Below, piece by piece: positions 508-52,545 of a DNA stretch of 64,000 nt. Made by a program: the position numbers and the translations under genes. Numbering within the stretch: position 1 is the stretch's first letter; each line of letters starts with the position of its first letter. Below the pieces are notes generated by a model. It did no database searches. It saw only the letters and a program-made list of their open reading frames with translations, and was not told the DNA's origin. The stretch lies in the sequence record MH383160.1; one strand, given 5' to 3'.

Positions 508-918
508 TCAATTCCCCATTACTAAAGTGTTTTTAATCTCCAACAATTCACTATACATATTCTTCAATTGTAATATATCTTCAAAAGTAATACCACCAAG
601 ATCATCAACTAATGAACGTTGGAATAAAGATTCACTTGTTTGTAATGTATCTAAATCGGTGATTTTTAATAAAGAACTTGGATTAAGTGTTTCGACTAGT
701 AGTATGTTTTTGTATGGTACATATGTGATCTTGATGTTCTTTTTATAATTAATCTTATAAAATCGCATAATTGACGATTCATCACTTAGTTGGATAATTG
801 GGTCGTCTTGTTCATTAGACCACCATACAGTACTAGTCATATGATTGACGTGGTGGTTCAATTCTGATATGTCCAAATCTAAAAAATATTTTAGTTCATT
901 GTGTAAATCTAAACTCAT
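508..918 (-). CDS. hypothetical protein, FFQxS-motif paralogue family
   Basis: 136 aa; TSESLFQRSLVDDLGGITF; GAGG RBS and sigma70 promoter upstream. Confidence 0.75.
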   Translation of the reverse strand: MSLDLHNELKYFLDLDISELNHHVNHMTSTVWWSNEQDDPIIQLSDESSIMRFYKINYKKNIKITYVPYKNILLVETLNPSSLLKITDLDTLQTSESLFQRSLVDDLGGITFEDILQLKNMYSELLEIKNTLVMGN

Positions 919-948
919 AAATTTATCCTCAATGCAGCATCATCATGT

Positions 949-977
949 ATTGTAGGATAAACCCACAATAATGTCAA
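949..977 (-). promoter_or_regulatory. sigma70-type early promoter TTGACA-N17-TACAAT
   Basis: near-consensus boxes, 17-bp spacer, intergenic. Confidence 0.8.
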
Positions 978-1369
978 GATGTGAAATAATTATACCAGTA
1001 ATATAGTTCTTTTAATTCTTCAGTACTGAACAATACTTCTTCTATTGTAGATTGTTGAAAGTGATATTCATCATTTAGATACATAGAAATATTACTATAT
1101 ACTTTCCTATTGTATTGACATAAAAAAGAAGTTTTTTGATTAATGTATTCAGTAAATGTTAATTTATCTAACTCAATATCGAATGATAATTTAATAATAT
1201 GACTATTATCATTTACATACATTAGTTTCTTTGAAAAATGATCAATTGTAATATATTCTTTATGAGAGAACTGAAATATATTATTAAATTTATTACCATT
1301 TGTGCTTCTAAATTTTTCAAGGTAATAAGAAAGTGGTTTAATTATTGAAGTTCCAATATTGTTCTTCAT
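974..1369 (-). CDS. hypothetical protein, FFQxS-motif paralogue family
   Basis: 131 aa; NDEYHFQQSTIEE motif; GAGG RBS. Confidence 0.7.
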   Translation of the reverse strand: MKNNIGTSIIKPLSYYLEKFRSTNGNKFNNIFQFSHKEYITIDHFSKKLMYVNDNSHIIKLSFDIELDKLTFTEYINQKTSFLCQYNRKVYSNISMYLNDEYHFQQSTIEEVLFSTEELKELYYWYNYFTS

Positions 1370-1390
1370 ATATCCTCAATTTTAGATAAG

Positions 1391-1414
1391 AAAAATGCCC
1401 CGAAGATCGGGGCA
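1391..1414 (-). terminator. intrinsic terminator
   Basis: TGCCCCG/CGGGGCA stem followed by T-run on minus strand. Confidence 0.75.
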
Positions 1415-1529
1415 GTACTAAAATGATTTTGTACCAAAAGGGGAATAAGAACAAAATGAAAATATAATAACGCATCATTATTATGTAAGGGAGGAAAGTA
1501 ACATGATATGTTAACCATTTCTGGTATAT

Positions 1530-2081
1530 TTATTTATCATTTAATTCTTTAAGTTGGGTTTGTATATCTTTAGTTATATTTCGAATTTTCTTAAAGCAAT
1601 AAACACTATCGTCCAATTCGATTTTAAGTTCATGTGTAAATGCATACAGAAGTTCAGCAAATACTAAATCTTGACGCATCCAGTTTCCATCTTTATATAA
1701 AGTCATTACACAATATGGGCATTCACTATTAGAAGTTTGCTTTCCAATAAAAACACTTTGAATTGATTCATGCTTAAAGCCAATAAAACTTTCATTTATT
1801 TTTTTAATTTCAGTACTGATATCGAATTTAGCACTGGTGTTGATTGCAAAAATTTTATTCCCACTTTCATCAGTATTGATATTGAGTTCAATATCACTAC
1901 CTAGTTTACGTACTGCTAGAGTATAAAGAAGTAATTCATACATGTCGTAACTTGTTACATTACCATTTGGTGCAATTACATCAACACTAACACCGTGCAT
2001 TTTTACTTCTGTATTAAATCCATCTTTATCAGAAAGAAAATCAGTGATTTGCTTTGTAAGGATTTTAATTTGGTCTATCAT
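1530..2081 (-). CDS. hypothetical protein
   Basis: 183 aa ORF, AAGGA RBS. Confidence 0.75.
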   Translation of the reverse strand: MIDQIKILTKQITDFLSDKDGFNTEVKMHGVSVDVIAPNGNVTSYDMYELLLYTLAVRKLGSDIELNINTDESGNKIFAINTSAKFDISTEIKKINESFIGFKHESIQSVFIGKQTSNSECPYCVMTLYKDGNWMRQDLVFAELLYAFTHELKIELDDSVYCFKKIRNITKDIQTQLKELNDK

Positions 2082-2101
2082 ATTTCATTTCCTTATGTGA
2101 T

Positions 2102-2126
2102 AAAAGCCTCCATAATGGAGGCTTTT
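2102..2126. terminator. intrinsic terminator, possibly bidirectional
   Basis: AAAAGCCTCCA-TAA-TGGAGGCTTTT perfect hairpin. Confidence 0.8.
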
Positions 2127-2134
2127 GTATTTAC

Positions 2135-2563
2135 TTAGAGAGATTCTTCGTATTCAGCAACAATCCCAACCATTTCATTAATGAACTTGATGTGAGAATG
2201 TGTCACTGTACGGAAATCGTAAACAAGTGACTGTTGGAAAAATACATCTTCATCAAGAGAACCATCAAAGTTCAAATCAATGTTTTCATCGTCATTGCTT
2301 GGTGCAACTTTAATATTCAGAAGATTTTCATCAACTGCAAGTTTTACAACACAACCCAGTGCAATGGCAAGAACATATGCTGGTTTCTTAGCTTTTTCAT
2401 TACGGAATGGTGCACGTAGAGCACAAAAAGTACTGCTAATCTCATCATTCGGTTCTTTGTATTTAACATTGACCATTAGTTCTTCGATTTTGACGCTCTC
2501 AATAACACGACCAGTTTCTGGAGCGAAGAAAGAATGTTCACGGATAGTTTGTTCGATATTCAT
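2135..2563 (-). CDS. hypothetical protein, FFQxS-motif paralogue family
   Basis: 142 aa; DEDVFFQQSLVYDFRTVT; AAGGA RBS. Confidence 0.75.
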   Translation of the reverse strand: MNIEQTIREHSFFAPETGRVIESVKIEELMVNVKYKEPNDEISSTFCALRAPFRNEKAKKPAYVLAIALGCVVKLAVDENLLNIKVAPSNDDENIDLNFDGSLDEDVFFQQSLVYDFRTVTHSHIKFINEMVGIVAEYEESL

Positions 2564-2566
2564 ATA

Positions 2567-2761
2567 TTATTCCTTATTTAGATTGCTAAAAATACGAAGA
2601 TTGCGGTTTGCTTTAAACTGTTTCAAATCACCAAATCTATCATCAACGATGAAAGTTGCTGATTTCTTTGACTGACATATTGTACAAATCAACATACCTT
2701 GTATTGTATACTCAGTTGAGCAATTTGTACAGTACTTTTTTTCATAAAGTTCAGTACTCAT
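2567..2761 (-). CDS. small zinc-finger protein
   Basis: CxxC...CxxC (CTNC, CTIC). Confidence 0.6.
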   Translation of the reverse strand: MSTELYEKKYCTNCSTEYTIQGMLICTICQSKKSATFIVDDRFGDLKQFKANRNLRIFSNLNKE

Positions 2762-3093
2762 AAAACCTTCACATCAGTACGTTTTTCTCTTTGTTCTTTT
2801 TTAACCTCATCAGTTCTAGTATCTTCTAATTGTAACACAACTTCTTTTAGAATGTCAACATCAATTGTTGCTTCTACATATTGATAGTCGTTTACACCAA
2901 AAACATACTTTACTGCAACCCATACACGGTTATACCATTTTAAAAAAGGATTTAAACGCATACTTATCAGACATTGACCAAGTTTATCATCTCCATATTC
3001 CTCTGTCAAGTCAAATTGTGCAATGTGAACGCAATGCTCCATTTTATCGCCACAAGAACAACGTAAAATATACTCTTTACTATCTTCACTCAT
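2758..3093 (-). CDS. hypothetical protein
   Basis: 111 aa, ATGA-coupled to neighbours. Confidence 0.7.
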   Translation of the reverse strand: MSEDSKEYILRCSCGDKMEHCVHIAQFDLTEEYGDDKLGQCLISMRLNPFLKWYNRVWVAVKYVFGVNDYQYVEATIDVDILKEVVLQLEDTRTDEVKKEQREKRTDVKVL

Positions 3094-3512
3094 ACTGGAT
3101 AAGCCTTTAAAAATTGTTTAAGAACTCCAAACTTAGATGAATCGTAATCGTATTGATAGTTAAGCTCTCGCTTATCATTCATACGATACACCATATGAAA
3201 ATTTGGATAACCAATTCTAACAGGTTTTTTAGGATTAGCAAGTAAAATTGCCCATTCTTTTACAGGAAATACGTTTTCAGACAGCATTTTGATATTTGTT
3301 TCAAAATACTTCATGGCTTGCTTTCCGTGCTTGTAATCTTCTTCACTAATCTCTTGACAATCAATTCTATGTGTTTCGGTATCTAACACCCATTGTTGAT
3401 CTTCGGTATATAAATCAATTACATCATCAATAGTATAACTATCAGGTAAATCATAAAATACCCAATGAGATAAACCAGAACTTACACCAATTCGAATTTT
3501 AAAGAACTTCAT
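3090..3512 (-). CDS. hypothetical protein
   Basis: 140 aa, ATGA overlap. Confidence 0.7.
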   Translation of the reverse strand: MKFFKIRIGVSSGLSHWVFYDLPDSYTIDDVIDLYTEDQQWVLDTETHRIDCQEISEEDYKHGKQAMKYFETNIKMLSENVFPVKEWAILLANPKKPVRIGYPNFHMVYRMNDKRELNYQYDYDSSKFGVLKQFLKAYPV

Positions 3513-3670
3513 TCTTTATCACCTTTTACATAATTATAACACACGACACAGTGAATTACAAGAAGAATTATTTCCACAATATTAAGAGACAATACATGAC
3601 TCTGCGGTGTGAAAAGTGCCAATAACAACATTATAGCAGGTATTGTGAATATTTTCCAAGTTTTTTTCAT
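3509..3670 (-). CDS. small membrane protein (53 aa)
   Basis: start revised to ATG 3670 (AAGGA RBS, follows 3672 stop); two hydrophobic stretches. Confidence 0.6.
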   Translation of the reverse strand: MKKTWKIFTIPAIMLLLALFTPQSHVLSLNIVEIILLVIHCVVCYNYVKGDKE

Positions 3671-3671
3671 T

Positions 3672-3902
3672 TTATTCCTTTGTATATGCATATGGTAAAA
3701 ATAAAACCTCTGCATTAGGAATGCATTGTGCCAATCCTTCAACAATAGATTTGTTTTTATTACATTGCCAAACTTTAGTAATTTTATGTCTAAATACTTT
3801 TTTATCAACAACAATCCAGTACATGTCCATTTTAACAGTACTGTTATCAGATGGTGTTAGTAAAGTATCGATGTCATATGTATCAAAGATTTTGTCGTTC
3901 AT
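3672..3902 (-). CDS. hypothetical protein
   Basis: 76 aa, GGAG RBS. Confidence 0.7.
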   Translation of the reverse strand: MNDKIFDTYDIDTLLTPSDNSTVKMDMYWIVVDKKVFRHKITKVWQCNKNKSIVEGLAQCIPNAEVLFLPYAYTKE

Positions 3903-15099: not shown

Positions 15100-15152
15100 A
15101 ATCTGTCCAAATAAAAAGCCCAGATATTCATCCGAGCTTTAATTATATTTTA

Positions 15153-15479
15153 TTAACGACCAAAGGTTAGCATTTTAGTTCGTGGATCTTCATCTGAAAC
15201 TAAACTAACTGCGGCTGGATAATCAACCAAGTTTAATTCAATACCATCAACTTCAATAGTTCTTGACCATCGACCATGATCAATTAAAATCCATTGACCT
15301 TCTTTAATATCAGTAATGTCTTCGCCTACAGAATAAACTTTTGCCCAGCGAGAACGAATACCTCTAATTTTACCGTCATCGTTTGTTAAAACGATACCAC
15401 CTGCTGTTTTGCGTTCACCATGTTCCAGTTCAGTTACCAGTACTTTACCTTTACATGCAGTCATTACTTTATTAGTCAT
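15153..15479 (-). CDS. groES: co-chaperonin GroES-like (copy 1)
   Basis: ERKTAGGIVL mobile loop, VYSVGE, IKEGQWIL. Confidence 0.85.
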   Translation of the reverse strand: MTNKVMTACKGKVLVTELEHGERKTAGGIVLTNDDGKIRGIRSRWAKVYSVGEDITDIKEGQWILIDHGRWSRTIEVDGIELNLVDYPAAVSLVSDEDPRTKMLTFGR

Positions 15480-15487
15480 TTAATATA

Positions 15488-15832
15488 TTACTCCTGATCT
15501 TTGGTTCTAGCTCGACGTGGTGCTTTCTTCTCTTCAGAAACCTCAGCTTCTTGTTCTTCGGGCTTAACTTCAAAACTCTCATCATCCCATACTTCATCCG
15601 TACCATGTTCAGTACTATGAAGTTGATGTTCAGGGATATAATCAGGAATTTGCATTTCTCGTTCTTTTTCTTGTATCAACTCTTCACGAGTTTTAATAAT
15701 TGTTCCACCGGAACCGATTTTATCACCACGTGCGTTTAGATTAGCATTACCCAATGCTACCTGATGTTGATTTTGGTACTTGAGCATATCCATGTCAATT
15801 GTTGTACCACGATAAGTTGTATGTTTAGACAT
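15488..15832 (-). CDS. conserved jumbo-phage protein
   Basis: IDMDML...ALGNANLNARGDKIG motif; acidic C-terminus. Confidence 0.65.
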   Translation of the reverse strand: MSKHTTYRGTTIDMDMLKYQNQHQVALGNANLNARGDKIGSGGTIIKTREELIQEKEREMQIPDYIPEHQLHSTEHGTDEVWDDESFEVKPEEQEAEVSEEKKAPRRARTKDQE

Positions 15833-15895
15833 ATCAAAATCCTTTTATTGTATGTGTGATATAAGCCTACAATAAACATTATATCACATGTTTTT

Positions 15896-16414
15896 CTACC
15901 ATTTCAAAAATTCGTTAACATCAAGTTCGTACTTCAATGAATCTACCATATGTAGTCCAATCAAAAACAAACAGTATGATGCAACCGAGCTTCCACGACC
16001 TAGACCCCAAAAGATCTCATTTTCTTCCATATAATCAACAAGCCATATCATACATCTTAGTAGCTTTGTCATATTATAATATTCATATAAATCAAGTTCA
16101 TACTCAACACGTTTTCGTGCTTCATCGGATGTGCATTTTTGTAAGAAAAAGTCACGCAGATTTATATTGTCGTATACTGGATCATATCGCCACAGTTCAT
16201 GATTTTTATCATGCTCAATTGTATAATCCAGCATACGTTGTTCTAAGCCAAATTTTTTACAGTTATCATTGAATTTCAACCTTTCAGGTTCATCAATTTC
16301 CTGCAATTGTAAGTACTGGATATCTGCACCGCAATTGATTGCATAAACAACTGCGTTAAGATTACATTTCACATCACCATTGGGACTTATAAATCTGTTT
16401 CCTTGTACTTTCAT
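15896..16414 (-). CDS. DNA polymerase III alpha (DnaE)-like, N-terminal palm fragment
   Basis: RVEYELDL...WGLGRGSSVASYCLFLIGLHMVDSLKYELDVNEFLK matches DnaE GPGRGS...DPLKYDLLFERFL. Confidence 0.85.
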   Translation of the reverse strand: MKVQGNRFISPNGDVKCNLNAVVYAINCGADIQYLQLQEIDEPERLKFNDNCKKFGLEQRMLDYTIEHDKNHELWRYDPVYDNINLRDFFLQKCTSDEARKRVEYELDLYEYYNMTKLLRCMIWLVDYMEENEIFWGLGRGSSVASYCLFLIGLHMVDSLKYELDVNEFLKW

Positions 16415-16685
16415 TTTTCTTCTTCTGGGCCTCTTCGTTGTCAGTTAGATATGAATCCATATCGAAGATACATGGGTCTTCTTCGTCATAAACAGTTTTT
16501 TCTTTTTGTCCTTGGCGAAGTTCTAGTTCAGCATAACATTGATTTAAGACAGTTTGCATATTACCAATAATCATGTCGCTTAGGCCAGCAGCACGAGCAG
16601 AAGTTAAACGCATTGACTGTTCATTAATTTTTAACTGTAGTTCTTTTTCCGTCATTCCAGACGGGTCAAAAAACGGATTAAACAT
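16374..16685 (-). CDS. conserved hypothetical protein
   Basis: 103 aa, helical, follows large late gene. Confidence 0.65.
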   Translation of the reverse strand: MFNPFFDPSGMTEKELQLKINEQSMRLTSARAAGLSDMIIGNMQTVLNQCYAELELRQGQKEKTVYDEEDPCIFDMDSYLTDNEEAQKKKNESTRKQIYKSQW

Positions 16686-16686
16686 A

Positions 16687-19080
16687 TTAACCTCCTATGT
16701 TATTGTTTTGCAATGTAATCAAAAATGTATCTGAAACATAATTCACTGATTCATGCGAAAAGTATCCGAATTCAACCGATGTGATTTCGAACTCTACACC
16801 TACCATTGTACCATGTTCATTGTTCTGAAGTAAAGTGTTGAAAAATGCTTCACCTTTGCCTGGTTGACAATATGCAACTGGAATGATAGGCATGAATTTT
16901 TTCTGTATACCATCTTCAATGTATGGGTGATTCATAAATCTTGGGACCGTATCAAGCATTTCATCACTGATACTTGGTATCGCATCAACGTATAGACCAC
17001 GATTTTGTAAATCGGTTGGGTCTTTTACTAAGTTGGTTGTGTCTTCACCAATAGCCTGAAAAATATTTTGTCGTAAACCAAATAATTCACCAAGCTGACC
17101 GTTGTCGATTTGAGTATATTGACGTGGATTTTTGGATACAGATACTAAAGAACCTTCAGGTAAAACCTCTCTATATAATAGATCATATTGTAAGTTACCT
17201 TGATTGTCAAGTGCTGATATTATTTTATAATTACCCATTACCATTTTAAATTTTCCATTTGGAATAGTAGTTCCATTTGGGTTAATTATACTATTTCTCA
17301 ATACTTTCTTGATATCAGAAAGGTTAGTATATGGATACGTTTGACTTAGGAAGTTTTCTTTTAATAACATCTTCGGTATTTTCTGAAGACCATATCTATT
17401 GTCAGATTGTCGGAAAAATAGTTGATTAGTGAATGATGAAGTACTTATACATTTAAACCATTCTCTCTCAAATGCAACCGAAGGTAATACATGTGCACTC
17501 AAATAATTCTGTCCGAATCCTCTTACAATCTTAAGGTTAAATATTTTTCTTGCTTCACCACCTTCAGTACTAAATGCTTTAACATAAAACGATAATTTAA
17601 TATCATCATTTTCACTAAAATCAATACTTTTGGCATATGCAGTTCCTACAAGATATCCATCTGGTGTCAAATCTATCCCATACTTTCTAATGTCATCACC
17701 ACCATCTAAAACATACGAAACTTGATTAGAGCTATCAGTTTCAATTTTAGGATATATACTGTCTCCAAAATATTCACCAACATGTATGGTTCCTAAATCA
17801 CTATCAGTAATAAAGTTTATATTATTACCTTCTTCTGCGTTTATCAAAACCCTGAACATTTTTTGCATACCAATGATATTATCACCAAGAGTAGAGTCAT
17901 AATATCCTAAATCAATCCAATCACTACTATCATAAACGGGCTTAATTGTTCCATTATCGTATTCACCACTAATTACGTATGGATACACAACATTATCTTT
18001 TAATTGATATAAATGATTGGGTAGTGGTTTTTCTGAAATAGAATATATAGTATCTATGTCTTCAGGACAAACCCACATTTGATATGCTTTATATCGTTGA
18101 TTGATAGCAAACCTTTCACTTTCTTCGGTGTATGTACTTAATATATCAACAATCTCAACTTTAAAATATGCATCACAAGCATCTGAGTCATATAAAAATG
18201 TTTGCAATAATTGCCCATTTGGGTTGAACACCATTCCAGTGTCAATTAAATTACCATTTCTATTTTGAATATTAACTTTTACTTCTTTGTTTATACCAGA
18301 AATAGGCCATGTTGATTGTGCTGGCTTGAATACTGCGAAATCATTCGTAATATGTTTATCTGGAACTTCAGAAATATCCATGTCAATCAAACGATATGCT
18401 GGAAAAAAGACACGAGGTGTAATATCAGTAGTCATGTCAGTACCCAAAATGAAAGGTCGTCTTCTTCCAAATCCTTGAACGAACAATGTACTGTTGGAGC
18501 CATACTCAACATCACCAATACAATAAAGCTTTTTGTCATCACCAATCTCAACGCCAGGTGTAACCCAAACTTCTTGACTATCATATGTTATTGATGTATC
18601 AGTTAATCCTAGAACACCACTTGGTGAAATATTTCCAAAATACATAACATTTACTGCTTGTAAATAAAAATTTATAATTTCTGTATTATTATAGGTTCCA
18701 TCATTTTTACAATGAATTTTTATAAAATAAACATCTTCACTATTAGTACTTGCAGATAAGTTAAATTCATTTTTGCTGATTTTACACTTATGCTTACCAT
18801 TTACTAATTTATTACCAGTTGTACCATCTGAAATAGGAACAAAAGTATTTTCGTCATTACCAACATAAAAAGTATAATGTGGTTCTGGATCAAATACAGC
18901 ACCTGAACTATCCAAGCATTGTATGTTAAGAATCATTTCTAAGTATTCATCTTCATTTAATACATAGCTATCATCCGTTGTGCTTTCTTTATTGATACTC
19001 AAACGCACAAGAATGTCTTGTCCTTCTTGTATATATCGAGCATCGGCTTTTATATCCCATCGTGGGGTAAAAGTTGTCAT
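16687..19080 (-). CDS. large virion structural protein (baseplate-like)
   Basis: about 800 aa beta-rich; TATAAATA late promoter at 19119-19126; GGAG RBS supports start 19080. Confidence 0.6.
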   Translation of the reverse strand: MTTFTPRWDIKADARYIQEGQDILVRLSINKESTTDDSYVLNEDEYLEMILNIQCLDSSGAVFDPEPHYTFYVGNDENTFVPISDGTTGNKLVNGKHKCKISKNEFNLSASTNSEDVYFIKIHCKNDGTYNNTEIINFYLQAVNVMYFGNISPSGVLGLTDTSITYDSQEVWVTPGVEIGDDKKLYCIGDVEYGSNSTLFVQGFGRRRPFILGTDMTTDITPRVFFPAYRLIDMDISEVPDKHITNDFAVFKPAQSTWPISGINKEVKVNIQNRNGNLIDTGMVFNPNGQLLQTFLYDSDACDAYFKVEIVDILSTYTEESERFAINQRYKAYQMWVCPEDIDTIYSISEKPLPNHLYQLKDNVVYPYVISGEYDNGTIKPVYDSSDWIDLGYYDSTLGDNIIGMQKMFRVLINAEEGNNINFITDSDLGTIHVGEYFGDSIYPKIETDSSNQVSYVLDGGDDIRKYGIDLTPDGYLVGTAYAKSIDFSENDDIKLSFYVKAFSTEGGEARKIFNLKIVRGFGQNYLSAHVLPSVAFEREWFKCISTSSFTNQLFFRQSDNRYGLQKIPKMLLKENFLSQTYPYTNLSDIKKVLRNSIINPNGTTIPNGKFKMVMGNYKIISALDNQGNLQYDLLYREVLPEGSLVSVSKNPRQYTQIDNGQLGELFGLRQNIFQAIGEDTTNLVKDPTDLQNRGLYVDAIPSISDEMLDTVPRFMNHPYIEDGIQKKFMPIIPVAYCQPGKGEAFFNTLLQNNEHGTMVGVEFEITSVEFGYFSHESVNYVSDTFLITLQNNNIGG

Positions 19081-19118
19081 TATAATTCTCCATAGCCAAG
19101 CTGCCATTATCTATAGAT

Positions 19119-19126
19119 TATTTATA
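19119..19126 (-). promoter_or_regulatory. T4-type late promoter TATAAATA
   Basis: exact T4 late consensus between a terminator and a structural gene. Confidence 0.75.
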
Positions 19127-19167
19127 TAAAGGACAAGGAAGACCCATAAGGTCTTCCATTAAATATA

Positions 19168-46412: not shown

Positions 46413-46766
46413 ATGAATCAATATAACACTATTCCACCATTTATTACTGTAATCCAGTATGATGGTAAAACGTTTGTAGGTATCATCAAAATCAAAAGCA
46501 AACAGTATACAACTCTTTACTGTTTCGATGATATGGATGATTCAATGCAAGACGAATTGTTAGGTATAGCACACGATTGGTGGTGGCAAAGTAATAGAAC
46601 CATTCCAGTTTGTCTATTCTTTCAAGAAGAGATGGAGAAATTTGAACCGTACACACAGAGATTCGATACACCGTCGGTGAATTTCGTATGTGGTCCAGTA
46701 GTTTCTTTAAGCAATTTGCCACAGAAACGCATCAAGCGTCGTAATGTGGCTCTTAAGAAGAAGTAA
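46413..46766 (+). CDS. conserved hypothetical protein (WWWQSNR motif)
   Basis: plus-strand ORF, GGA RBS, TAAATA at 46370-46375. Confidence 0.7.
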   Translation: MNQYNTIPPFITVIQYDGKTFVGIIKIKSKQYTTLYCFDDMDDSMQDELLGIAHDWWWQSNRTIPVCLFFQEEMEKFEPYTQRFDTPSVNFVCGPVVSLSNLPQKRIKRRNVALKKK

Positions 46767-47391
46767 GATGTTCAACTAAAGCATTTAGTTGTACAACAAT
46801 CATTAAGCTATATGCGTAAGCATGTGGCTTTTTGAAATATCGTAATTTATTTCCTGCTTGGTCAGTGCCTATAGTGCTATAATCCCATATGGTGGCTTTA
46901 ACTTCGTCCCATGTGTTCATACTTTGGCACTGCCTTTTTCCTGGGCGAATCATTGCAATAAACATTGCTAGTTCGTCTATAGATTTAGGCTTCCATACAT
47001 TTAATAAAGTTACATGTTTTTTAATTTGCGATAGATGTTCTACAAATTCGGGTTCTAACAATAGATCCCAATTTGGTTCCTGATTCATTAGTTCTTTTAA
47101 ATGCTCTCTATCACGAACATACATGTAAGCTGACTGTGAAAGAATATCAACTTTTTGATACCCTAACTTTTCAGCTTCTTTATATTGTATACTTGCCAAT
47201 CCAGTGATTGGGTCAATAGGTATATTATCAAAATGAACACCACTATTATGGGGGATTAAACCATCCTCCGTAATTTTTTCAGTACTTCGCACACATGGAA
47301 GTTTAGCGATTACGCTTTTACTATCCTTGAAGTCAATGTCAATATCAGTTCGGGCTTTTCTATAATGTTTAGAATCGGTCGAATCCTGCAT
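46753..47391 (-). CDS. DNA polymerase III alpha (DnaE)-like, catalytic/fingers fragment
   Basis: TDIDIDF (DxD), HNSGV, GYQKVDIL (third Asp), AMIRPG, FKKPHAYAY. Confidence 0.88.
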   Translation of the reverse strand: MQDSTDSKHYRKARTDIDIDFKDSKSVIAKLPCVRSTEKITEDGLIPHNSGVHFDNIPIDPITGLASIQYKEAEKLGYQKVDILSQSAYMYVRDREHLKELMNQEPNWDLLLEPEFVEHLSQIKKHVTLLNVWKPKSIDELAMFIAMIRPGKRQCQSMNTWDEVKATIWDYSTIGTDQAGNKLRYFKKPHAYAYSLMIVVQLNALVEHLTSS

Positions 47392-47698
47392 TTTTTATTT
47401 GCTCCTGTAACTGTTTAACTGTATTAGTCAAAGTTGATATTTGATTCTCTAATAATCTACAATTTTGTTTTGTCTTTGCCAATTCTTGACTTAAACTGAA
47501 AAAGCGTTCTTCGTGTCTTTCTACCAAAGAAATAATTTTTTCAATACGAGCAGGATCATGAACTTGAAATGTTTTACCATCTAAAGTTATTTCAGTAATA
47601 GATCCTTGTCTAAGTAGAGATATTTGTTTTGATTTTTGTTCTTTAGGTACAGGTACATACCCTTCTGGTATTTTATTATATATACTTTTTCCATTCAT
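47369..47698 (-). CDS. coiled-coil hypothetical protein
   Basis: C-terminal heptad pattern. Confidence 0.6.
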   Translation of the reverse strand: MNGKSIYNKIPEGYVPVPKEQKSKQISLLRQGSITEITLDGKTFQVHDPARIEKIISLVERHEERFFSLSQELAKTKQNCRLLENQISTLTNTVKQLQEQIKNAGFDRF

Positions 47699-48405
47699 AA
47701 TCCTGCCTCACATAGCATAATCTTAATTTCATCACAATCCTTTTTGTATTTTATAGTTTTGATTTCAAAATAACTTGGATCGATGTATTTAAGTATATAT
47801 TCAATTTCTGAGTTTGATAGTTTTTTAAAAAACTTATTAGTACTTTTTTTAGGAGCAAGCCAGATAATCCAAGGTGAAATTTTACCACTCTCAATCCATG
47901 CAATTGCACGGGCAGAACTTACATTTTCAAAGAAAGTATTCCATTGTACATTCAAATTTTCAGCCCATTCAACCAGTGAGATAACACTTCTTGCAATTGC
48001 TTCTTTTGGGTGCTCGGCACGAATTGTTTTTAATATCCATTCATCTTTTGCTTTATATGTACTCCATTCCGTGATTGGTTTGTTATTGATAATCAAGTAC
48101 TTTACAAACTCGTCCACATTAATAATATCTCTATTATTCAAATAGTATTCGGCAAAACTATAAAAATCATTAAAGTACTTTGACTTTATAAAAGCAATAA
48201 AAGGCTCTACGCCTTTTTTAAATGGGAACTTATTCAATTCCATAAATTGCATATATATACGAAAAGCCTCCATCATCTGGCGGCTTTGGCGGTCTTCGTA
48301 TCGGTCACGTTTTATACATTTATGTGTGTTTACAGTTTCTTCACGTTTAAATTCACGATCACAAAATCTACAGGTATATACTTTATTACTTGATTTCTTT
48401 GCCAT
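47695..48405 (-). CDS. conserved protein with N-terminal zinc finger
   Basis: YTCRFCDREFKREETVNTHKC. Confidence 0.7.
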   Translation of the reverse strand: MAKKSSNKVYTCRFCDREFKREETVNTHKCIKRDRYEDRQSRQMMEAFRIYMQFMELNKFPFKKGVEPFIAFIKSKYFNDFYSFAEYYLNNRDIINVDEFVKYLIINNKPITEWSTYKAKDEWILKTIRAEHPKEAIARSVISLVEWAENLNVQWNTFFENVSSARAIAWIESGKISPWIIWLAPKKSTNKFFKKLSNSEIEYILKYIDPSYFEIKTIKYKKDCDEIKIMLCEAGL

Positions 48406-51726: not shown

Positions 51727-52545
51727 TTAATTAGTTCGAGTATTATATTCGTACTCAAATGTATATACTAAATCTTTATCACAGTTAGGGTTACTTGCAT
51801 CTAAAATGTCACTATTAGTAATCATCCATTCAATGTAATTCAATGGAACTGTACTCATTGGCTCACCTTTGTGTTTACCAAATGGCATGAATTGATAACG
51901 CATTGGTGTGTTGCAGAAAGTTACAATTTGCTCACCAATATCACCATTAGGTTCAATATGTCCACGTTCGATTGCAATTTCAACTAATTTGATTAGAACC
52001 TGATAACACATGAACACATCGTCTTTTGCTGCGTGTGCATTAACAGGTCGATGAACATCACGATAACATCCAAACTTATACCACAAATAACTTAGAGTTA
52101 AGTTTTTAAATTCAATATCTTCTGCGAACATTTTCTTAGCAAGACGAAGGGTACAAATCCATTTATTTTCATCAAGTAAGTACTGTGAAATTGAGTTACG
52201 ATATTTATATTCGTTATCTACCATCATTCTACGGTCAAATTGTACATTATGACCAACAAAATACTTACGGCATCCCATAAGTGCATCAATGTTATCTAAA
52301 TCATCTTTATACCCAACACAATTAGCTACATCCTCAGTACTGATAAAGTGCACAGCAGATGCCTCTGGTGGAATATCTTTCAAGGGTTTGTATCTCAATG
52401 TATAGTTATCAATAGTATCAATGTTTTCATGTGAAGTATGTGGATACGAGATACTAAATTCAATAATATCATCTTCACTCTCAACCCCAGTAGTTTCAGT
52501 ATCTAGAACTGCTACATTTGATAAAAACTCATTTAATTTTGTCAT
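51727..52545 (-). CDS. DEDDh exonuclease (ExoX/DnaQ-like) with C-terminal MPFGKHKG domain
   Basis: VLDTETTG, VGHNVQFD, AHAAKDD, MPFGKHKGEPMSTVPLNYIEW. Confidence 0.88.
   Translation of the reverse strand: MTKLNEFLSNVAVLDTETTGVESEDDIIEFSISYPHTSHENIDTIDNYTLRYKPLKDIPPEASAVHFISTEDVANCVGYKDDLDNIDALMGCRKYFVGHNVQFDRRMMVDNEYKYRNSISQYLLDENKWICTLRLAKKMFAEDIEFKNLTLSYLWYKFGCYRDVHRPVNAHAAKDDVFMCYQVLIKLVEIAIERGHIEPNGDIGEQIVTFCNTPMRYQFMPFGKHKGEPMSTVPLNYIEWMITNSDILDASNPNCDKDLVYTFEYEYNTRTN

What the first reader, a model, noticed from the sequence alone, without database searches (positions are those of the whole stretch)
15896..16414. Miniature DnaE-type polymerase split into two complementary genes 30 kb apart (N fragment)
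This 172-aa protein ends at ...LKYELDVNEFLKW, where bacterial DnaE reads ...LLFERFLNPER. The 212-aa protein at 46753-47391 begins almost at once with RTDIDIDF, the next DnaE motif (SMPDFDVDF). Together they supply GRGS, DxD and KxD, about 385 aa, with no PHP, OB or clamp-binding domains and no intein halves. The rest of the replisome is T4-like, so the main replicase is presumably a B-family enzyme elsewhere. Inference: a non-covalent heterodimeric C-family nucleotidyltransferase with a specialised role (primer extension, repair, lesion bypass, nucleotide tailing). These fragments are probably annotated in relatives, but I know of no established function.
Basis: partly seen in the sequence, partly recalled or inferred. 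Interest (0 to 1): 0.7.

Follow-up and report, generated by a model that had tools for sequence, protein, structure and literature searches.

The report
Split mini Pol III in jumbo phage

Summary
The window is the last 64 kb of Escherichia phage UB, a Rak2/PBECO4-like jumbo phage. The 172-aa protein (15896-16414, minus strand) passes Pfam's DNA_pol3_alpha cut-off. It aligns to E. coli Pol III alpha up to about residue 392-394 and carries the GRGS nucleotide-binding motif. The 212-aa protein (46753-47391, minus strand) starts with the next DnaE element, the D-x-D-x-D strand (E. coli D401/D403/D405). It also carries the third catalytic Asp, finger motifs and the steric-gate His. The cut therefore lies inside the nucleotidyltransferase core, so neither half can be catalytic alone.

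Both models hit only C-family polymerases at the top. Key residues are 95-100% conserved in 122 and about 250 homologues. The halves co-occur across jumbo-phage lineages, and two natural single-chain versions exist. There are no PHP, thumb, clamp-binding, OB or intein parts. A family B polymerase lies just past the window end.

This is not new. Iyer et al. 2021 (PMC7824862) describe exactly this split minimal Pol III, and RefSeq and PHROGs label both halves "DNA polymerase". New here: the mapped split point, the single-chain forms, conservation counts and conserved neighbour genes. The likely role, an accessory DNA polymerase beside the T4-like replisome, is inferred.

The parts
15896..16414 (-). 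N half of the split minimal Pol III alpha (172 aa). Residues ~1-75 are a lineage-specific N-terminal extension. [quoted passage not shown] The protein ends at about E. coli residue 392-394.
   Evidence: ORF. Pfam PF07733 E 1.9e-9, above cut-off. phrog_11127 'DNA polymerase' 3e-87. Profile against PDB: E. coli DnaE 320-392, Taq 382-454, Mtb DnaE1 336-406. AF2 pLDDT 85; the Foldseek top 8 hits are all C-family polymerases. R140/G141/S142/S146 are 100% conserved in 122 homologues.
46753..47391 (-). C half of the split minimal Pol III alpha (212 aa). It carries the catalytic D16/D18/D20 strand (E. coli D401/D403/D405), a short beta-hairpin where DnaE has its thumb, K80-x-D82 (third catalytic Asp, E. 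coli D555 by homology), and a compact helical remnant of the fingers with R149-P150-x-K152 and K187-x-x-H190-A-x-x-Y194 (His = presumptive steric gate).
   Evidence: ORF. phrog_11778 'DNA polymerase' 5e-108. Collinear profile alignment to Mtb DnaE1 413-424, 568-674, 765-787. AF2 pLDDT 91.2, pTM 0.76. The Foldseek top 8 hits are all Pol III alpha, probability 0.96-1.00, and the next hit has E 1.4. D16 and D18 are conserved in 254/254, D20 98%, K80/D82 99.6%, R149 98.8%, H190 98.3%.
46413..46766 (+). Candidate associated gene (117 aa, function unknown, phrog_11637). It is convergent with the C half and overlaps its 3' end by 14 nt. It has invariant W-W-(W)-x-S-N-R and a basic K-R-x-K-R C-terminal tail.
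   Evidence: Present in the same convergent position at 71 of 80 divergent IMG/VR C-half loci, in PA5oct and Atu_ph07, and next to the single-chain gene on contig L002. No Pfam or PDB relative. The association is shown; any functional link is inference.
15488..15832 (-). Candidate associated gene (114 aa, function unknown, phrog_14844), immediately downstream of the N half on the same strand. It has a conserved ~50-aa N-terminal motif and a variable acidic tail.
   Evidence: Present directly downstream at 72 of 80 divergent N-half loci, and in PA5oct and Atu_ph07. No Pfam or PDB relative. This may simply be conserved core synteny.
47695..48405 (-). Candidate associated gene (236 aa, function unknown, phrog_11058), upstream of the C half. 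It has an N-terminal C2H2-type zinc finger plus a helical domain.
   Evidence: Upstream of the C half at 57 of 80 divergent loci, and in PA5oct and Atu_ph07. The zinc finger matches C2H2 fingers in PDB (E 4e-5). This may simply be conserved core synteny.

Best explanation
The two genes encode the two obligate halves of one minimal C-family (Pol III alpha / DnaE-type) polymerase core. The N half supplies the helical scaffold and the G-R-G-S nucleotide-binding loop of the Pol-beta-like nucleotidyltransferase palm. The C half supplies the beta-strands with the three catalytic aspartates and a reduced finger module that holds the incoming dNTP, including the steric-gate histidine. The cut falls between the nucleotide-binding loop and the first catalytic strand, at about E. 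coli residue 394/395. The active site can therefore exist only when the two polypeptides associate non-covalently; there is no intein. Shown: homology, complementarity, conservation, co-occurrence and the existence of natural single-chain versions. Inferred: that the complex forms and is an active, template-dependent, dNTP-using DNA polymerase. It lacks PHP, thumb, clamp-binding and OB parts, and it sits beside a complete T4-like replisome with a proofreading family B polymerase. It is therefore most likely a short-patch accessory polymerase. My favoured role is extension of primase-made primers, or gap filling during replication, recombination or repair, with hand-off to the family B enzyme.
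For: Identity and complementarity:
- Pfam PF07733 passes its cut-off for the N half.
- The N profile ends at Mtb DnaE1 406 / E. coli 392, and the C profile starts at Mtb 413 and continues collinearly.
- The natural fusion P0302 aligns to E. coli 319-417 continuously through the junction (E 3.5e-6), and Pfam's palm model runs through it (residues 97-207 to profile 12-121).
- AF2 models of both halves (pLDDT 85 and 91) have only C-family polymerases as top Foldseek hits.

Active enzyme rather than relic:
- Catalytic and substrate-binding residues are 95-100% conserved in 122 N and about 250 C homologues at 30-50% overall identity.
- E. coli D401/D403/D555 as catalytic residues and H760 as steric gate come from PMC8485763.

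One enzyme:
- Genus counts in GenBank phages match: Escherichia 34/34, Pseudomonas 11/11, Salmonella 8/8, Erwinia 8/8, Xanthomonas 4/4, Yersinia 4/4, Cronobacter 2/2.
- More than 30 individual genomes appear in both lists across four lineages.
- Eight metagenome contigs of identical length carry both halves.
- Single-chain forms P0302 and P0376 have N-then-C order.

Replication role:
- The N half lies in a conserved block with the RFC-like clamp loader. The C half lies in a conserved block with the DNA primase. This holds in UB/PBECO4, PA5oct and Atu_ph07.
- The single-chain P0376 overlaps by 4 nt the end of a PF03090 Replicase + HTH gene. ColE2-type Rep is an RNA primase whose primer needs a separate polymerase (PMC4538821).
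- The same overall reading was published by Iyer et al. 2021.
Against: - No experiment on either protein was found, so complex formation and activity are untested.
- The C half's sequence match to solved DnaE structures is statistically weak on its own (E 0.35; Foldseek E 2e-3 to 4e-2, TM 0.35-0.47). It is convincing only through collinearity, motifs and the fused forms.
- The enzyme lacks the thumb and most DNA-binding parts of DnaE, so processive templated synthesis is doubtful.
- The Rep-primase link rests on one 8-kb contig whose protein has no close relatives.
- That PF03090 is the ColE2-type Rep family is my recollection, not a tool result.
- The neighbourhood conservation may be ordinary core synteny of this phage clade.
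- The N half sits in a tightly packed unit behind a structural gene with a T4-type late-promoter motif. That would fit a late function as well as a replicative one.
Confidence: 0.6

Rival explanations
1. The pair forms a specialised, non-replicative nucleotidyltransferase rather than a templated DNA polymerase. Examples would be untemplated tailing of DNA ends or synthesis of a nucleotide-based signal or counter-defence molecule.
For: The enzyme is reduced to little more than a Pol-beta-like nucleotidyltransferase core. It has no thumb, clamp-binding, HhH or OB parts. Many minimal members of that fold are untemplated (general knowledge). Both genes sit among virion and late-looking genes.
Against: [quoted passage not shown] The only structural matches are C-family polymerases, and the next hit has E > 1. 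Both conserved blocks contain replication genes, clamp loader and primase.
Confidence: 0.15
2. The fragments are decaying remnants of a captured bacterial dnaE gene. The CBB genome paper called the 172-aa protein 'truncated'. On this reading they have no activity.
For: The CBB paper describes the 172-aa protein as a truncated Pol III alpha (PMC5259590). Most DnaE domains are missing.
Against: Both pieces are intact ORFs of stable length in hundreds of clusters at 30-50% identity. Active-site residues are 95-100% conserved. The two pieces abut precisely without overlap. They co-occur across lineages whose genomes have been rearranged, with separation from 15 to 182 kb.
Confidence: 0.03
3. The two proteins do not pair with each other. 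Each works alone or with another partner, for example by complementing or modifying the host's own Pol III alpha.
For: The genes are never adjacent in the split lineages, and each has its own conserved small neighbours. No interaction data exist.
Against: The cut runs through the nucleotidyltransferase core, so neither piece has a complete active site. Single-chain N-C forms exist. Phyletic counts match.
Confidence: 0.05
4. The mini Pol III is the phage's main replicase, and the family B enzyme is the accessory or repair polymerase.
For: C-family polymerases are the main replicases of bacteria. Both halves are as widely conserved in this clade as the family B enzyme, according to Iyer et al..
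Against: It has no proofreading domain and no thumb, clamp-binding or OB parts. The family B enzyme is a complete 1001-aa T4 gp43-type polymerase with an exonuclease domain, next to clamp loader, helicase, primase and gp32-type SSB.
Confidence: 0.05

Closest known systems
Split minimal DNA polymerase III alpha of 'group 2.2' jumbo phages (Iyer, Anantharaman, Krishnan, Burroughs & Aravind 2021, Viruses 13:63, PMC7824862)
   Same: It is the same thing. Two standalone proteins from distant genes give an N-terminal NTP-binding part and a C-terminal Mg2+- and template-binding part. No other Pol III domains are present. They sit alongside a family B polymerase in Rak2-like and related jumbo phages.
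   Different: Nothing essential. Added here: the cut mapped to about E. coli residue 394/395, residue-level conservation counts, natural single-chain forms, and conserved neighbour genes.
Bacterial Pol III alpha (DnaE; e.g. E. coli 5fku, T. aquaticus 2hpi/3e0d/4iqj, M. tuberculosis DnaE1 5lew/7pu7) and PolC
   Same: Pol-beta-like palm with the G-R-G-S loop, the three catalytic aspartates, finger motifs and the steric-gate histidine. These are the only top structural matches.
   Different: About 384 aa instead of about 1160, and two polypeptides instead of one. There is no PHP domain, no beta-clamp-binding, OB or tau-binding parts. The thumb is replaced by a short beta-hairpin (M. tuberculosis ~425-567 shrinks to ~43 residues). 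A ~90-residue finger insertion is absent.
Cyanobacterial split dnaE joined by a split intein (recalled knowledge, not tested here)
   Same: A C-family polymerase encoded by two distant genes.
   Different: There the halves carry intein pieces and are spliced into one chain, and the break lies far downstream in the fingers. Here there is no intein/Hint domain and no spare length. The break is inside the palm core, so association must be non-covalent.
Two-polymerase replisomes in which one enzyme extends primers before hand-off (Bacillus DnaE with PolC; eukaryotic Pol alpha; ColE2 Rep primase with Pol I)
   Same: A non-proofreading, clamp-independent polymerase beside a main replicase. The C half lies in a conserved block with the primase, and one single-chain form directly follows a Rep-type gene.
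   Different: This is purely an analogy of role. No activity, primer preference or hand-off has been shown for the phage enzyme.

Membership tests
C-family DNA polymerase catalytic core (Pol III alpha / DnaE) | Pol-beta-like palm with the G-[R]-G-S nucleotide-binding loop | tested here: met
   PF07733 scores 37.9 bits against a cut-off of 23.9. The loop aligns to E. coli G361-S364. R140/G141/S142 are 100% conserved in 122 sequences.
C-family DNA polymerase catalytic core (Pol III alpha / DnaE) | Three catalytic aspartates (E. coli D401, D403, D555; PMC8485763) | tested here: met
   C half D16/D18/D20 align to Mtb D415/D417/D419 and, via P0302, to E. coli D401/D403/D405. K80-x-D82 aligns to the Mtb K-M-D strand. 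Conservation is 98-100%. Assignment of D82 to E. coli D555 is by homology through Mtb, not a direct alignment.
C-family DNA polymerase catalytic core (Pol III alpha / DnaE) | Finger motifs that hold the incoming dNTP, including the steric-gate His (E. coli H760) | tested here: met
   R149-P-x-K152 aligns to the Mtb R-P-G motif, and K187-x-x-H190-A-x-x-Y194 aligns to the Mtb K-S-H-A-x-x-Y motif. There is a weak Pfam DNA_pol3_finger hit (E 0.046). Conservation is 94-99%. The individual alignment pieces score low, so the support is collinearity plus motif identity.
C-family DNA polymerase catalytic core (Pol III alpha / DnaE) | N-terminal PHP domain | tested here: not met
   No PHP hit at E <= 1. 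Only about 75-95 residues precede the palm in the N half, and the single-chain P0376 lacks even those.
C-family DNA polymerase catalytic core (Pol III alpha / DnaE) | Thumb, beta-clamp-binding, HhH/OB and tau-binding parts; a single polypeptide | tested here: not met
   The C half ends about 20 residues after the K-x-x-H motif. Mtb 425-567 corresponds to about 43 residues. No further Pfam domains are found. The enzyme is encoded as two proteins.
C-family DNA polymerase catalytic core (Pol III alpha / DnaE) | Template-dependent DNA polymerase activity | not testable with these tools
   No experimental report found.
Split minimal Pol III alpha of group 2.2 jumbo phages (Iyer et al. 2021) | Two standalone proteins, N (NTP-binding) and C (Mg2+/template-binding), from distant genes | tested here: met
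   Separation is 30.3 kb here, and 15-182 kb in other lineages.
Split minimal Pol III alpha of group 2.2 jumbo phages (Iyer et al. 2021) | Occurs in T4-related jumbo phages together with a family B polymerase and no other Pol III domains | tested here: met
   The window is 100% identical to Escherichia phage UB, genus Asteriusvirus. The family B polymerase lies at UB 766-3771 and PBECO4 gp512. I did not scan the whole genome for other Pol III domains; that part rests on Iyer et al..
Intein-split DnaE (cyanobacterial type) | Split-intein halves at the junction that splice the two chains | tested here: not met
   No intein/Hint domain at E <= 1. The N half ends 1-2 residues after the last conserved palm helix. 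The C half has at most 15 residues before the catalytic strand.

The most novel reading that the evidence does not exclude
The split mini Pol III is the catalytic core of a larger, conserved module. It would work with the small proteins that always flank it: the basic-tailed 117-aa protein convergent with the C half, which also accompanies the single-chain form; the 114-aa protein after the N half; and the zinc-finger protein upstream of the C half. The module would act as a dedicated primer-extension polymerase linking the phage primase to the family B replicase. That would make it a phage counterpart of Pol alpha or of Bacillus DnaE.
Probability: 0.15. Interest if true: 0.7.

Novelty: already known. 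Interest (0 to 1): 0.35.

Why it matters
If active, this would be the smallest known C-family polymerase and the only one whose active site is assembled from two separate polypeptides. It would show which parts of Pol III alpha are truly needed for catalysis. It would also add a bacterial-type polymerase to an otherwise archaeo-eukaryotic/T4-type replisome. Iyer et al. proposed it as a model for the ancestral form of the bacterial replicase. The family is abundant: at least 570 loci for each half in IMG/VR, and 514 representative clusters for the C half. A clear function would therefore annotate many environmental phage genomes. In many GenBank records, including UB itself, the C half is still labelled 'hypothetical' or 'putative membrane protein'.

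Tried and rejected
- **Intersecting IMG/VR contig names for the two halves.** I used GenBank genus counts and matching contig lengths instead.
- **Generic sigma-70 promoter scans around both genes.** They were not enriched over shuffles (30 vs 24.9 +/- 4.5; 33 vs 29.7 +/- 5.0) and were discarded.
- **T4 late-promoter motif TATAAATA.** It is not enriched in the window (4 vs 10.8 expected). Only the one copy directly upstream of the 806-aa structural gene is noted.
- **DEDD exonuclease as a dedicated proofreader.** Its distribution is broader than that of the mini Pol III: it occurs in many small Pseudomonas phages that lack the mini Pol III. No specific link is claimed.
- **Expression timing from the PA5oct omics paper and the Sharanji paper.** Neither gives gene-level data.
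- **Is the Rep-linked single-chain form a family?** P0376 has no close relatives, so that context is a single instance.
- **Single-sequence searches of either half against PDB.** They gave nothing significant; profiles and the natural fusion were needed.
- **Profiles of the three conserved neighbours against PDB.** Only a C2H2-type zinc finger was recognised.
- **Joined chain for a complex prediction.** The natural fusion P0302 served as the continuous probe.
All DnaE correspondences reported here come from tool alignments or from PMC8485763.

Full report
**What the window is.** The region around both genes is 100% identical to Escherichia phage UB (MH383160.1). UB is a 353-kb member of the genus Asteriusvirus, the Rak2/PBECO4/121Q-like jumbo phages. 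The window is the last 64 kb of that linear record.

**Observation.**
- N half: 15896-16414, minus strand, 172 aa.
- C half: 46753-47391, minus strand, 212 aa, with D16-I-D18-I-D20 near its start.
- They are 30.3 kb apart on the same strand and total 384 aa.

**Homology of the N half.**
- It passes Pfam's curated threshold for DNA_pol3_alpha (PF07733, 37.9 bits against 23.9, E 1.9e-9). Residues 92-171 cover profile positions 16-95 of 260.
- A profile of 28 diverse homologues (A1) aligns to E. coli Pol III alpha 320-392, T. aquaticus 382-454 and M. tuberculosis DnaE1 336-406.
- The AlphaFold model (pLDDT 85) has C-family polymerases as its eight best PDB matches. The scores are weak (best E 0.04, probability 0.96), as expected for half a domain modelled without its partner.

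**Homology of the C half.**
- Alone it gives only a sub-threshold Pfam finger hit (E 0.046) and nothing in PDB by single-sequence search.
- A profile of 23 homologues (A2) aligns to M. tuberculosis DnaE1 in four collinear pieces:
  - the D-I-D-I-D strand at 413-424;
  - a low-scoring piece at 483-528, in the thumb region, which carries no motif;
  - the stretch from the K-x-D strand to the R-P-G motif at 568-674;
  - the K-S-H-A-x-x-Y motif at 765-787.
- The overall E-value (0.35) is not significant by itself.
- The model is confident (pLDDT 91.2, pTM 0.76). Its eight best PDB matches are all Pol III alpha (probability 0.96-1.00, E 2e-3 to 4e-2), followed by a gap to E 1.4.

**Complementarity and the position of the cut.**
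- The N profile ends at M. tuberculosis residue 406 and the C profile begins at 413.
- An exhaustive profile search with A2 over 1.84 billion representative proteins found 514 clusters, almost all of them 180-216-aa standalone proteins. There were two exceptions.
- P0302 (375 aa) matches the N profile at residues 7-185 (hhalign probability 99.9, E 1e-31) and the C profile at 190-370 (E 7e-47).
  - Pfam's palm model runs straight through its junction (residues 97-207 to profile 12-121, E 4.8e-16).
  - It aligns to E. coli Pol III alpha 319-417 in one stretch (E 3.5e-6).
  - Counting along that printed alignment puts the G-R-G-S loop at E. coli 361-364 and the D-x-D-x-D strand at D401/D403/D405.
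- P0376 (336 aa) has the same N-then-C order but lacks the first ~75 residues of the N half.
- The split in the window therefore lies at about E. coli residue 394/395, between the nucleotide-binding loop and the first catalytic strand. That is inside the Pol-beta-like nucleotidyltransferase core.
- Neither half can have a complete active site alone. This makes an obligate heterodimer the natural reading (inference).

| Half | Residue(s) | Conservation |
|---|---|---|
| N | R140, G141, S142, S146 | 122/122 |
| C | D16, D18 | 254/254 |
| C | D20 | 98% |
| C | K80, D82 | 99.6% |
| C | R149 | 98.8% |
| C | P150 | 99.6% |
| C | K152 | 95.5% |
| C | K187 | 95.8% |
| C | H190 | 98.3% |
| C | Y194 | 94.5% |

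PMC8485763 gives D401, D403 and D555 as the E. coli catalytic residues. It gives H760, preceded by S759 and invariant in Pol III alphas, as the presumptive steric gate against ribonucleotides. H190 aligns with the S-H of the mycobacterial motif. Retention of this residue favours a dNTP-using enzyme. Such conservation at 30-50% overall identity rules out decaying fragments.

**What is missing.**
- No PHP, OB, HhH, clamp-binding or intein/Hint domain is detected.
- The region that is the thumb in DnaE (M. tuberculosis ~425-567) is about 43 residues here, modelled as a beta-hairpin.
- A ~90-residue finger insertion (675-764) is absent.
- The N half ends within two residues of the last conserved palm helix. 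The C half has at most 15 residues before the catalytic strand. There is no room for split-intein halves.

**Co-occurrence.**
- tblastn against 50,697 GenBank phage records finds the N half in 120 records and the C half in 96.
- 25 of the N records are remote hits in Streptomyces and Bacillus phages, which the listed rows show to be full-length DnaE or PHP-domain genes.
- Genus counts match: Escherichia 34/34, Pseudomonas 11/11, Salmonella 8/8, Erwinia 8/8, Xanthomonas 4/4, Yersinia 4/4, Cronobacter 2/2, Klebsiella 10/11. One listed Klebsiella C-half record is a partial 86-kb record.
- More than 30 individual genomes appear in both truncated lists. They come from four lineages: Rak2-like, PA5oct-like, Atu_ph07 and Stenotrophomonas CM1.
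- The halves are always on the same strand and never adjacent. Separations:

| Phage | Separation |
|---|---|
| UB | 30.3 kb |
| RaK2 | 33.7 kb |
| GAP32 | 33.9 kb |
| PA5oct | 43.8 kb |
| Stenotrophomonas CM1 | 14.7 kb |
| Atu_ph07 | 182.5 kb |

- Eight metagenome contigs of identical length (52-360 kb) appear in both homologue lists.
- IMG/VR holds at least 572 N loci and at least 592 C loci, both capped.

**The rest of the replisome.**
- By the PBECO4 RefSeq annotation, the window and its surroundings encode a clamp loader, topoisomerase II, Dda-like and other helicases, RNase H, primase, UvsX/UvsY-type proteins and a gp32-type SSB.
- The family B polymerase (1001 aa; PF03104 exonuclease + PF00136 polymerase) lies about 0.8 kb beyond the window end. 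In UB's permuted record that is position 766-3771.
- The Rak2-like phage CBB is described the same way in PMC5259590, which called the 172-aa protein a 'truncated' Pol III alpha.

**Prior knowledge.**
- Iyer et al. [quoted passage not shown]
- They suggest it cooperates with the family B enzyme in synthesis of one strand or in repair.
- RefSeq records (PBECO4, 121Q and others) and PHROGs (phrog_11127, phrog_11778) label both halves 'DNA polymerase'.
- I found no later experimental work.
- The finding is therefore real and correctly interpreted, but already known.

**Additional observations made here.** Each half sits in a gene block that is conserved far beyond the Rak2 group.
- **N block:** N half, a 114-aa protein of unknown function (window 15488-15832), a GroES-like co-chaperonin, then an RFC-like clamp loader.
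- **C block:** a 236-aa zinc-finger protein (47695-48405), the C half, a convergent 117-aa protein overlapping its 3' end (46413-46766), a virion protein, then the DNA primase.
- In 80 divergent IMG/VR loci for each half, the 114-aa gene is present at 72, the 117-aa gene at 71 and the zinc-finger gene at 57.
- All three are also in place in PA5oct and Atu_ph07.
- The 117-aa gene is also convergent with the single-chain gene on contig L002 (E 2.3e-9).
- None has a Pfam or PDB relative apart from the C2H2-type finger.
- This may be ordinary core synteny, so I do not claim a functional link.
- The second single-chain form, P0376, overlaps by 4 nt the end of a 552-aa PF03090 'Replicase' + HTH gene on an 8-kb contig.
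  - ColE2 Rep is an AEP-family RNA primase whose primer is extended by a separate polymerase (PMC4538821).
  - That PF03090 is this family is my recollection, and P0376 has no close relatives. This is one suggestive instance only.

**Most likely mechanism.**
- Shown: two complementary, co-occurring, strongly constrained halves of a DnaE-type palm plus reduced fingers, with natural single-chain equivalents.
- Inferred, step 1: they associate non-covalently to form one active site.
- Inferred, step 2: the enzyme is a template-dependent, dNTP-selective DNA polymerase.
- Inferred, step 3: lacking proofreading, thumb and clamp contacts, it performs short synthesis beside the family B replicase. This would be primer extension next to the primase, or gap filling in recombination-dependent replication or repair.
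- Identity as a split DnaE-type core: about 0.9. Heterodimeric active polymerase: about 0.7. The specific primer-extension/accessory role: about 0.4.

**Rivals.**
- An untemplated or signalling nucleotidyltransferase, about 0.15. It is disfavoured by the retained finger motifs and the steric-gate histidine.
- Independent action of the halves, about 0.05.
- Main replicase, about 0.05.
- Decaying remnants, about 0.03.

Noticed in passing
window 46413-46766 (+): A 117-aa protein of unknown function (phrog_11637) is convergent with the C half and overlaps its 3' end by 14 nt. It has invariant W-W-(W)-x-S-N-R and a basic K-R-x-K-R tail. It keeps this position at 71 of 80 divergent loci, in PA5oct and Atu_ph07, and next to the single-chain mini Pol III gene on contig L002.
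   Followed up: partly
window 15488-15832 (-): A 114-aa protein of unknown function (phrog_14844) lies immediately downstream of the N half at 72 of 80 divergent loci, and in PA5oct and Atu_ph07. It has a conserved ~50-aa N-terminal motif, a variable acidic tail, and no Pfam or PDB relative.
   Followed up: partly
window 47695-48405 (-): A 236-aa protein (phrog_11058, unknown function) has an N-terminal C2H2-type zinc finger (profile against PDB, E 4e-5). It is conserved upstream of the C half at 57 of 80 loci, and in PA5oct and Atu_ph07.
   Followed up: partly
window 51727-52545 (-): A 272-aa DEDD exonuclease (PF00929 RNase_T, E 6.7e-15) is annotated in relatives as 'DNA polymerase exonuclease subunit', 'Pol III epsilon' or 'ExoX'. 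It lies about 4.3 kb upstream of the C half. It is present in Rak2-like and PA5oct-like phages, but also in many small phages without the mini Pol III, so there is no specific link.
   Followed up: partly
window 15115-19157 (-): A T4-type late-promoter motif (TATAAATA, 19119-19126) lies 12 nt upstream of the 806-aa virion-protein gene (start 19107). Terminator-like hairpins at 19137-19157 and 15115-15140 bracket a tightly packed unit: structural gene, 103-aa ORF, N half, 114-aa ORF, GroES-like gene. This hints that the N half may be read from a late transcript.
   Followed up: no
window 46753-47391 and relatives' records: The C half is annotated 'hypothetical protein' in UB itself and 'putative membrane protein' in GAP32, CBB and Erwinia phage records. 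Some JGI homologues are named 'YkuJ'. The model and profiles show a Pol III alpha-type fold, so these names look wrong.
   Followed up: partly
locus L169 (JGI contig Ga0669126_0033275) 1516-4181: An 8-kb metagenome contig carries a PF03090 Replicase + HTH gene whose end overlaps by 4 nt a single-chain mini Pol III (P0376). This looks like a compact primase/initiator plus polymerase module on a small element. It is a single instance.
   Followed up: partly
GenBank MH494197.1 (Escherichia phage CMSTMSU), hit H86: The N-half match in this 386-kb phage covers only 81% of the query at 69% identity, and the record has two matching places. This could be a duplicated or interrupted copy.
   Followed up: no
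window end (64000) / MH383160.1 766-3771: The family B DNA polymerase gene lies about 0.8 kb past the window end. Because the UB record is linearised there, the gene appears at the start of the record.
   Followed up: yes
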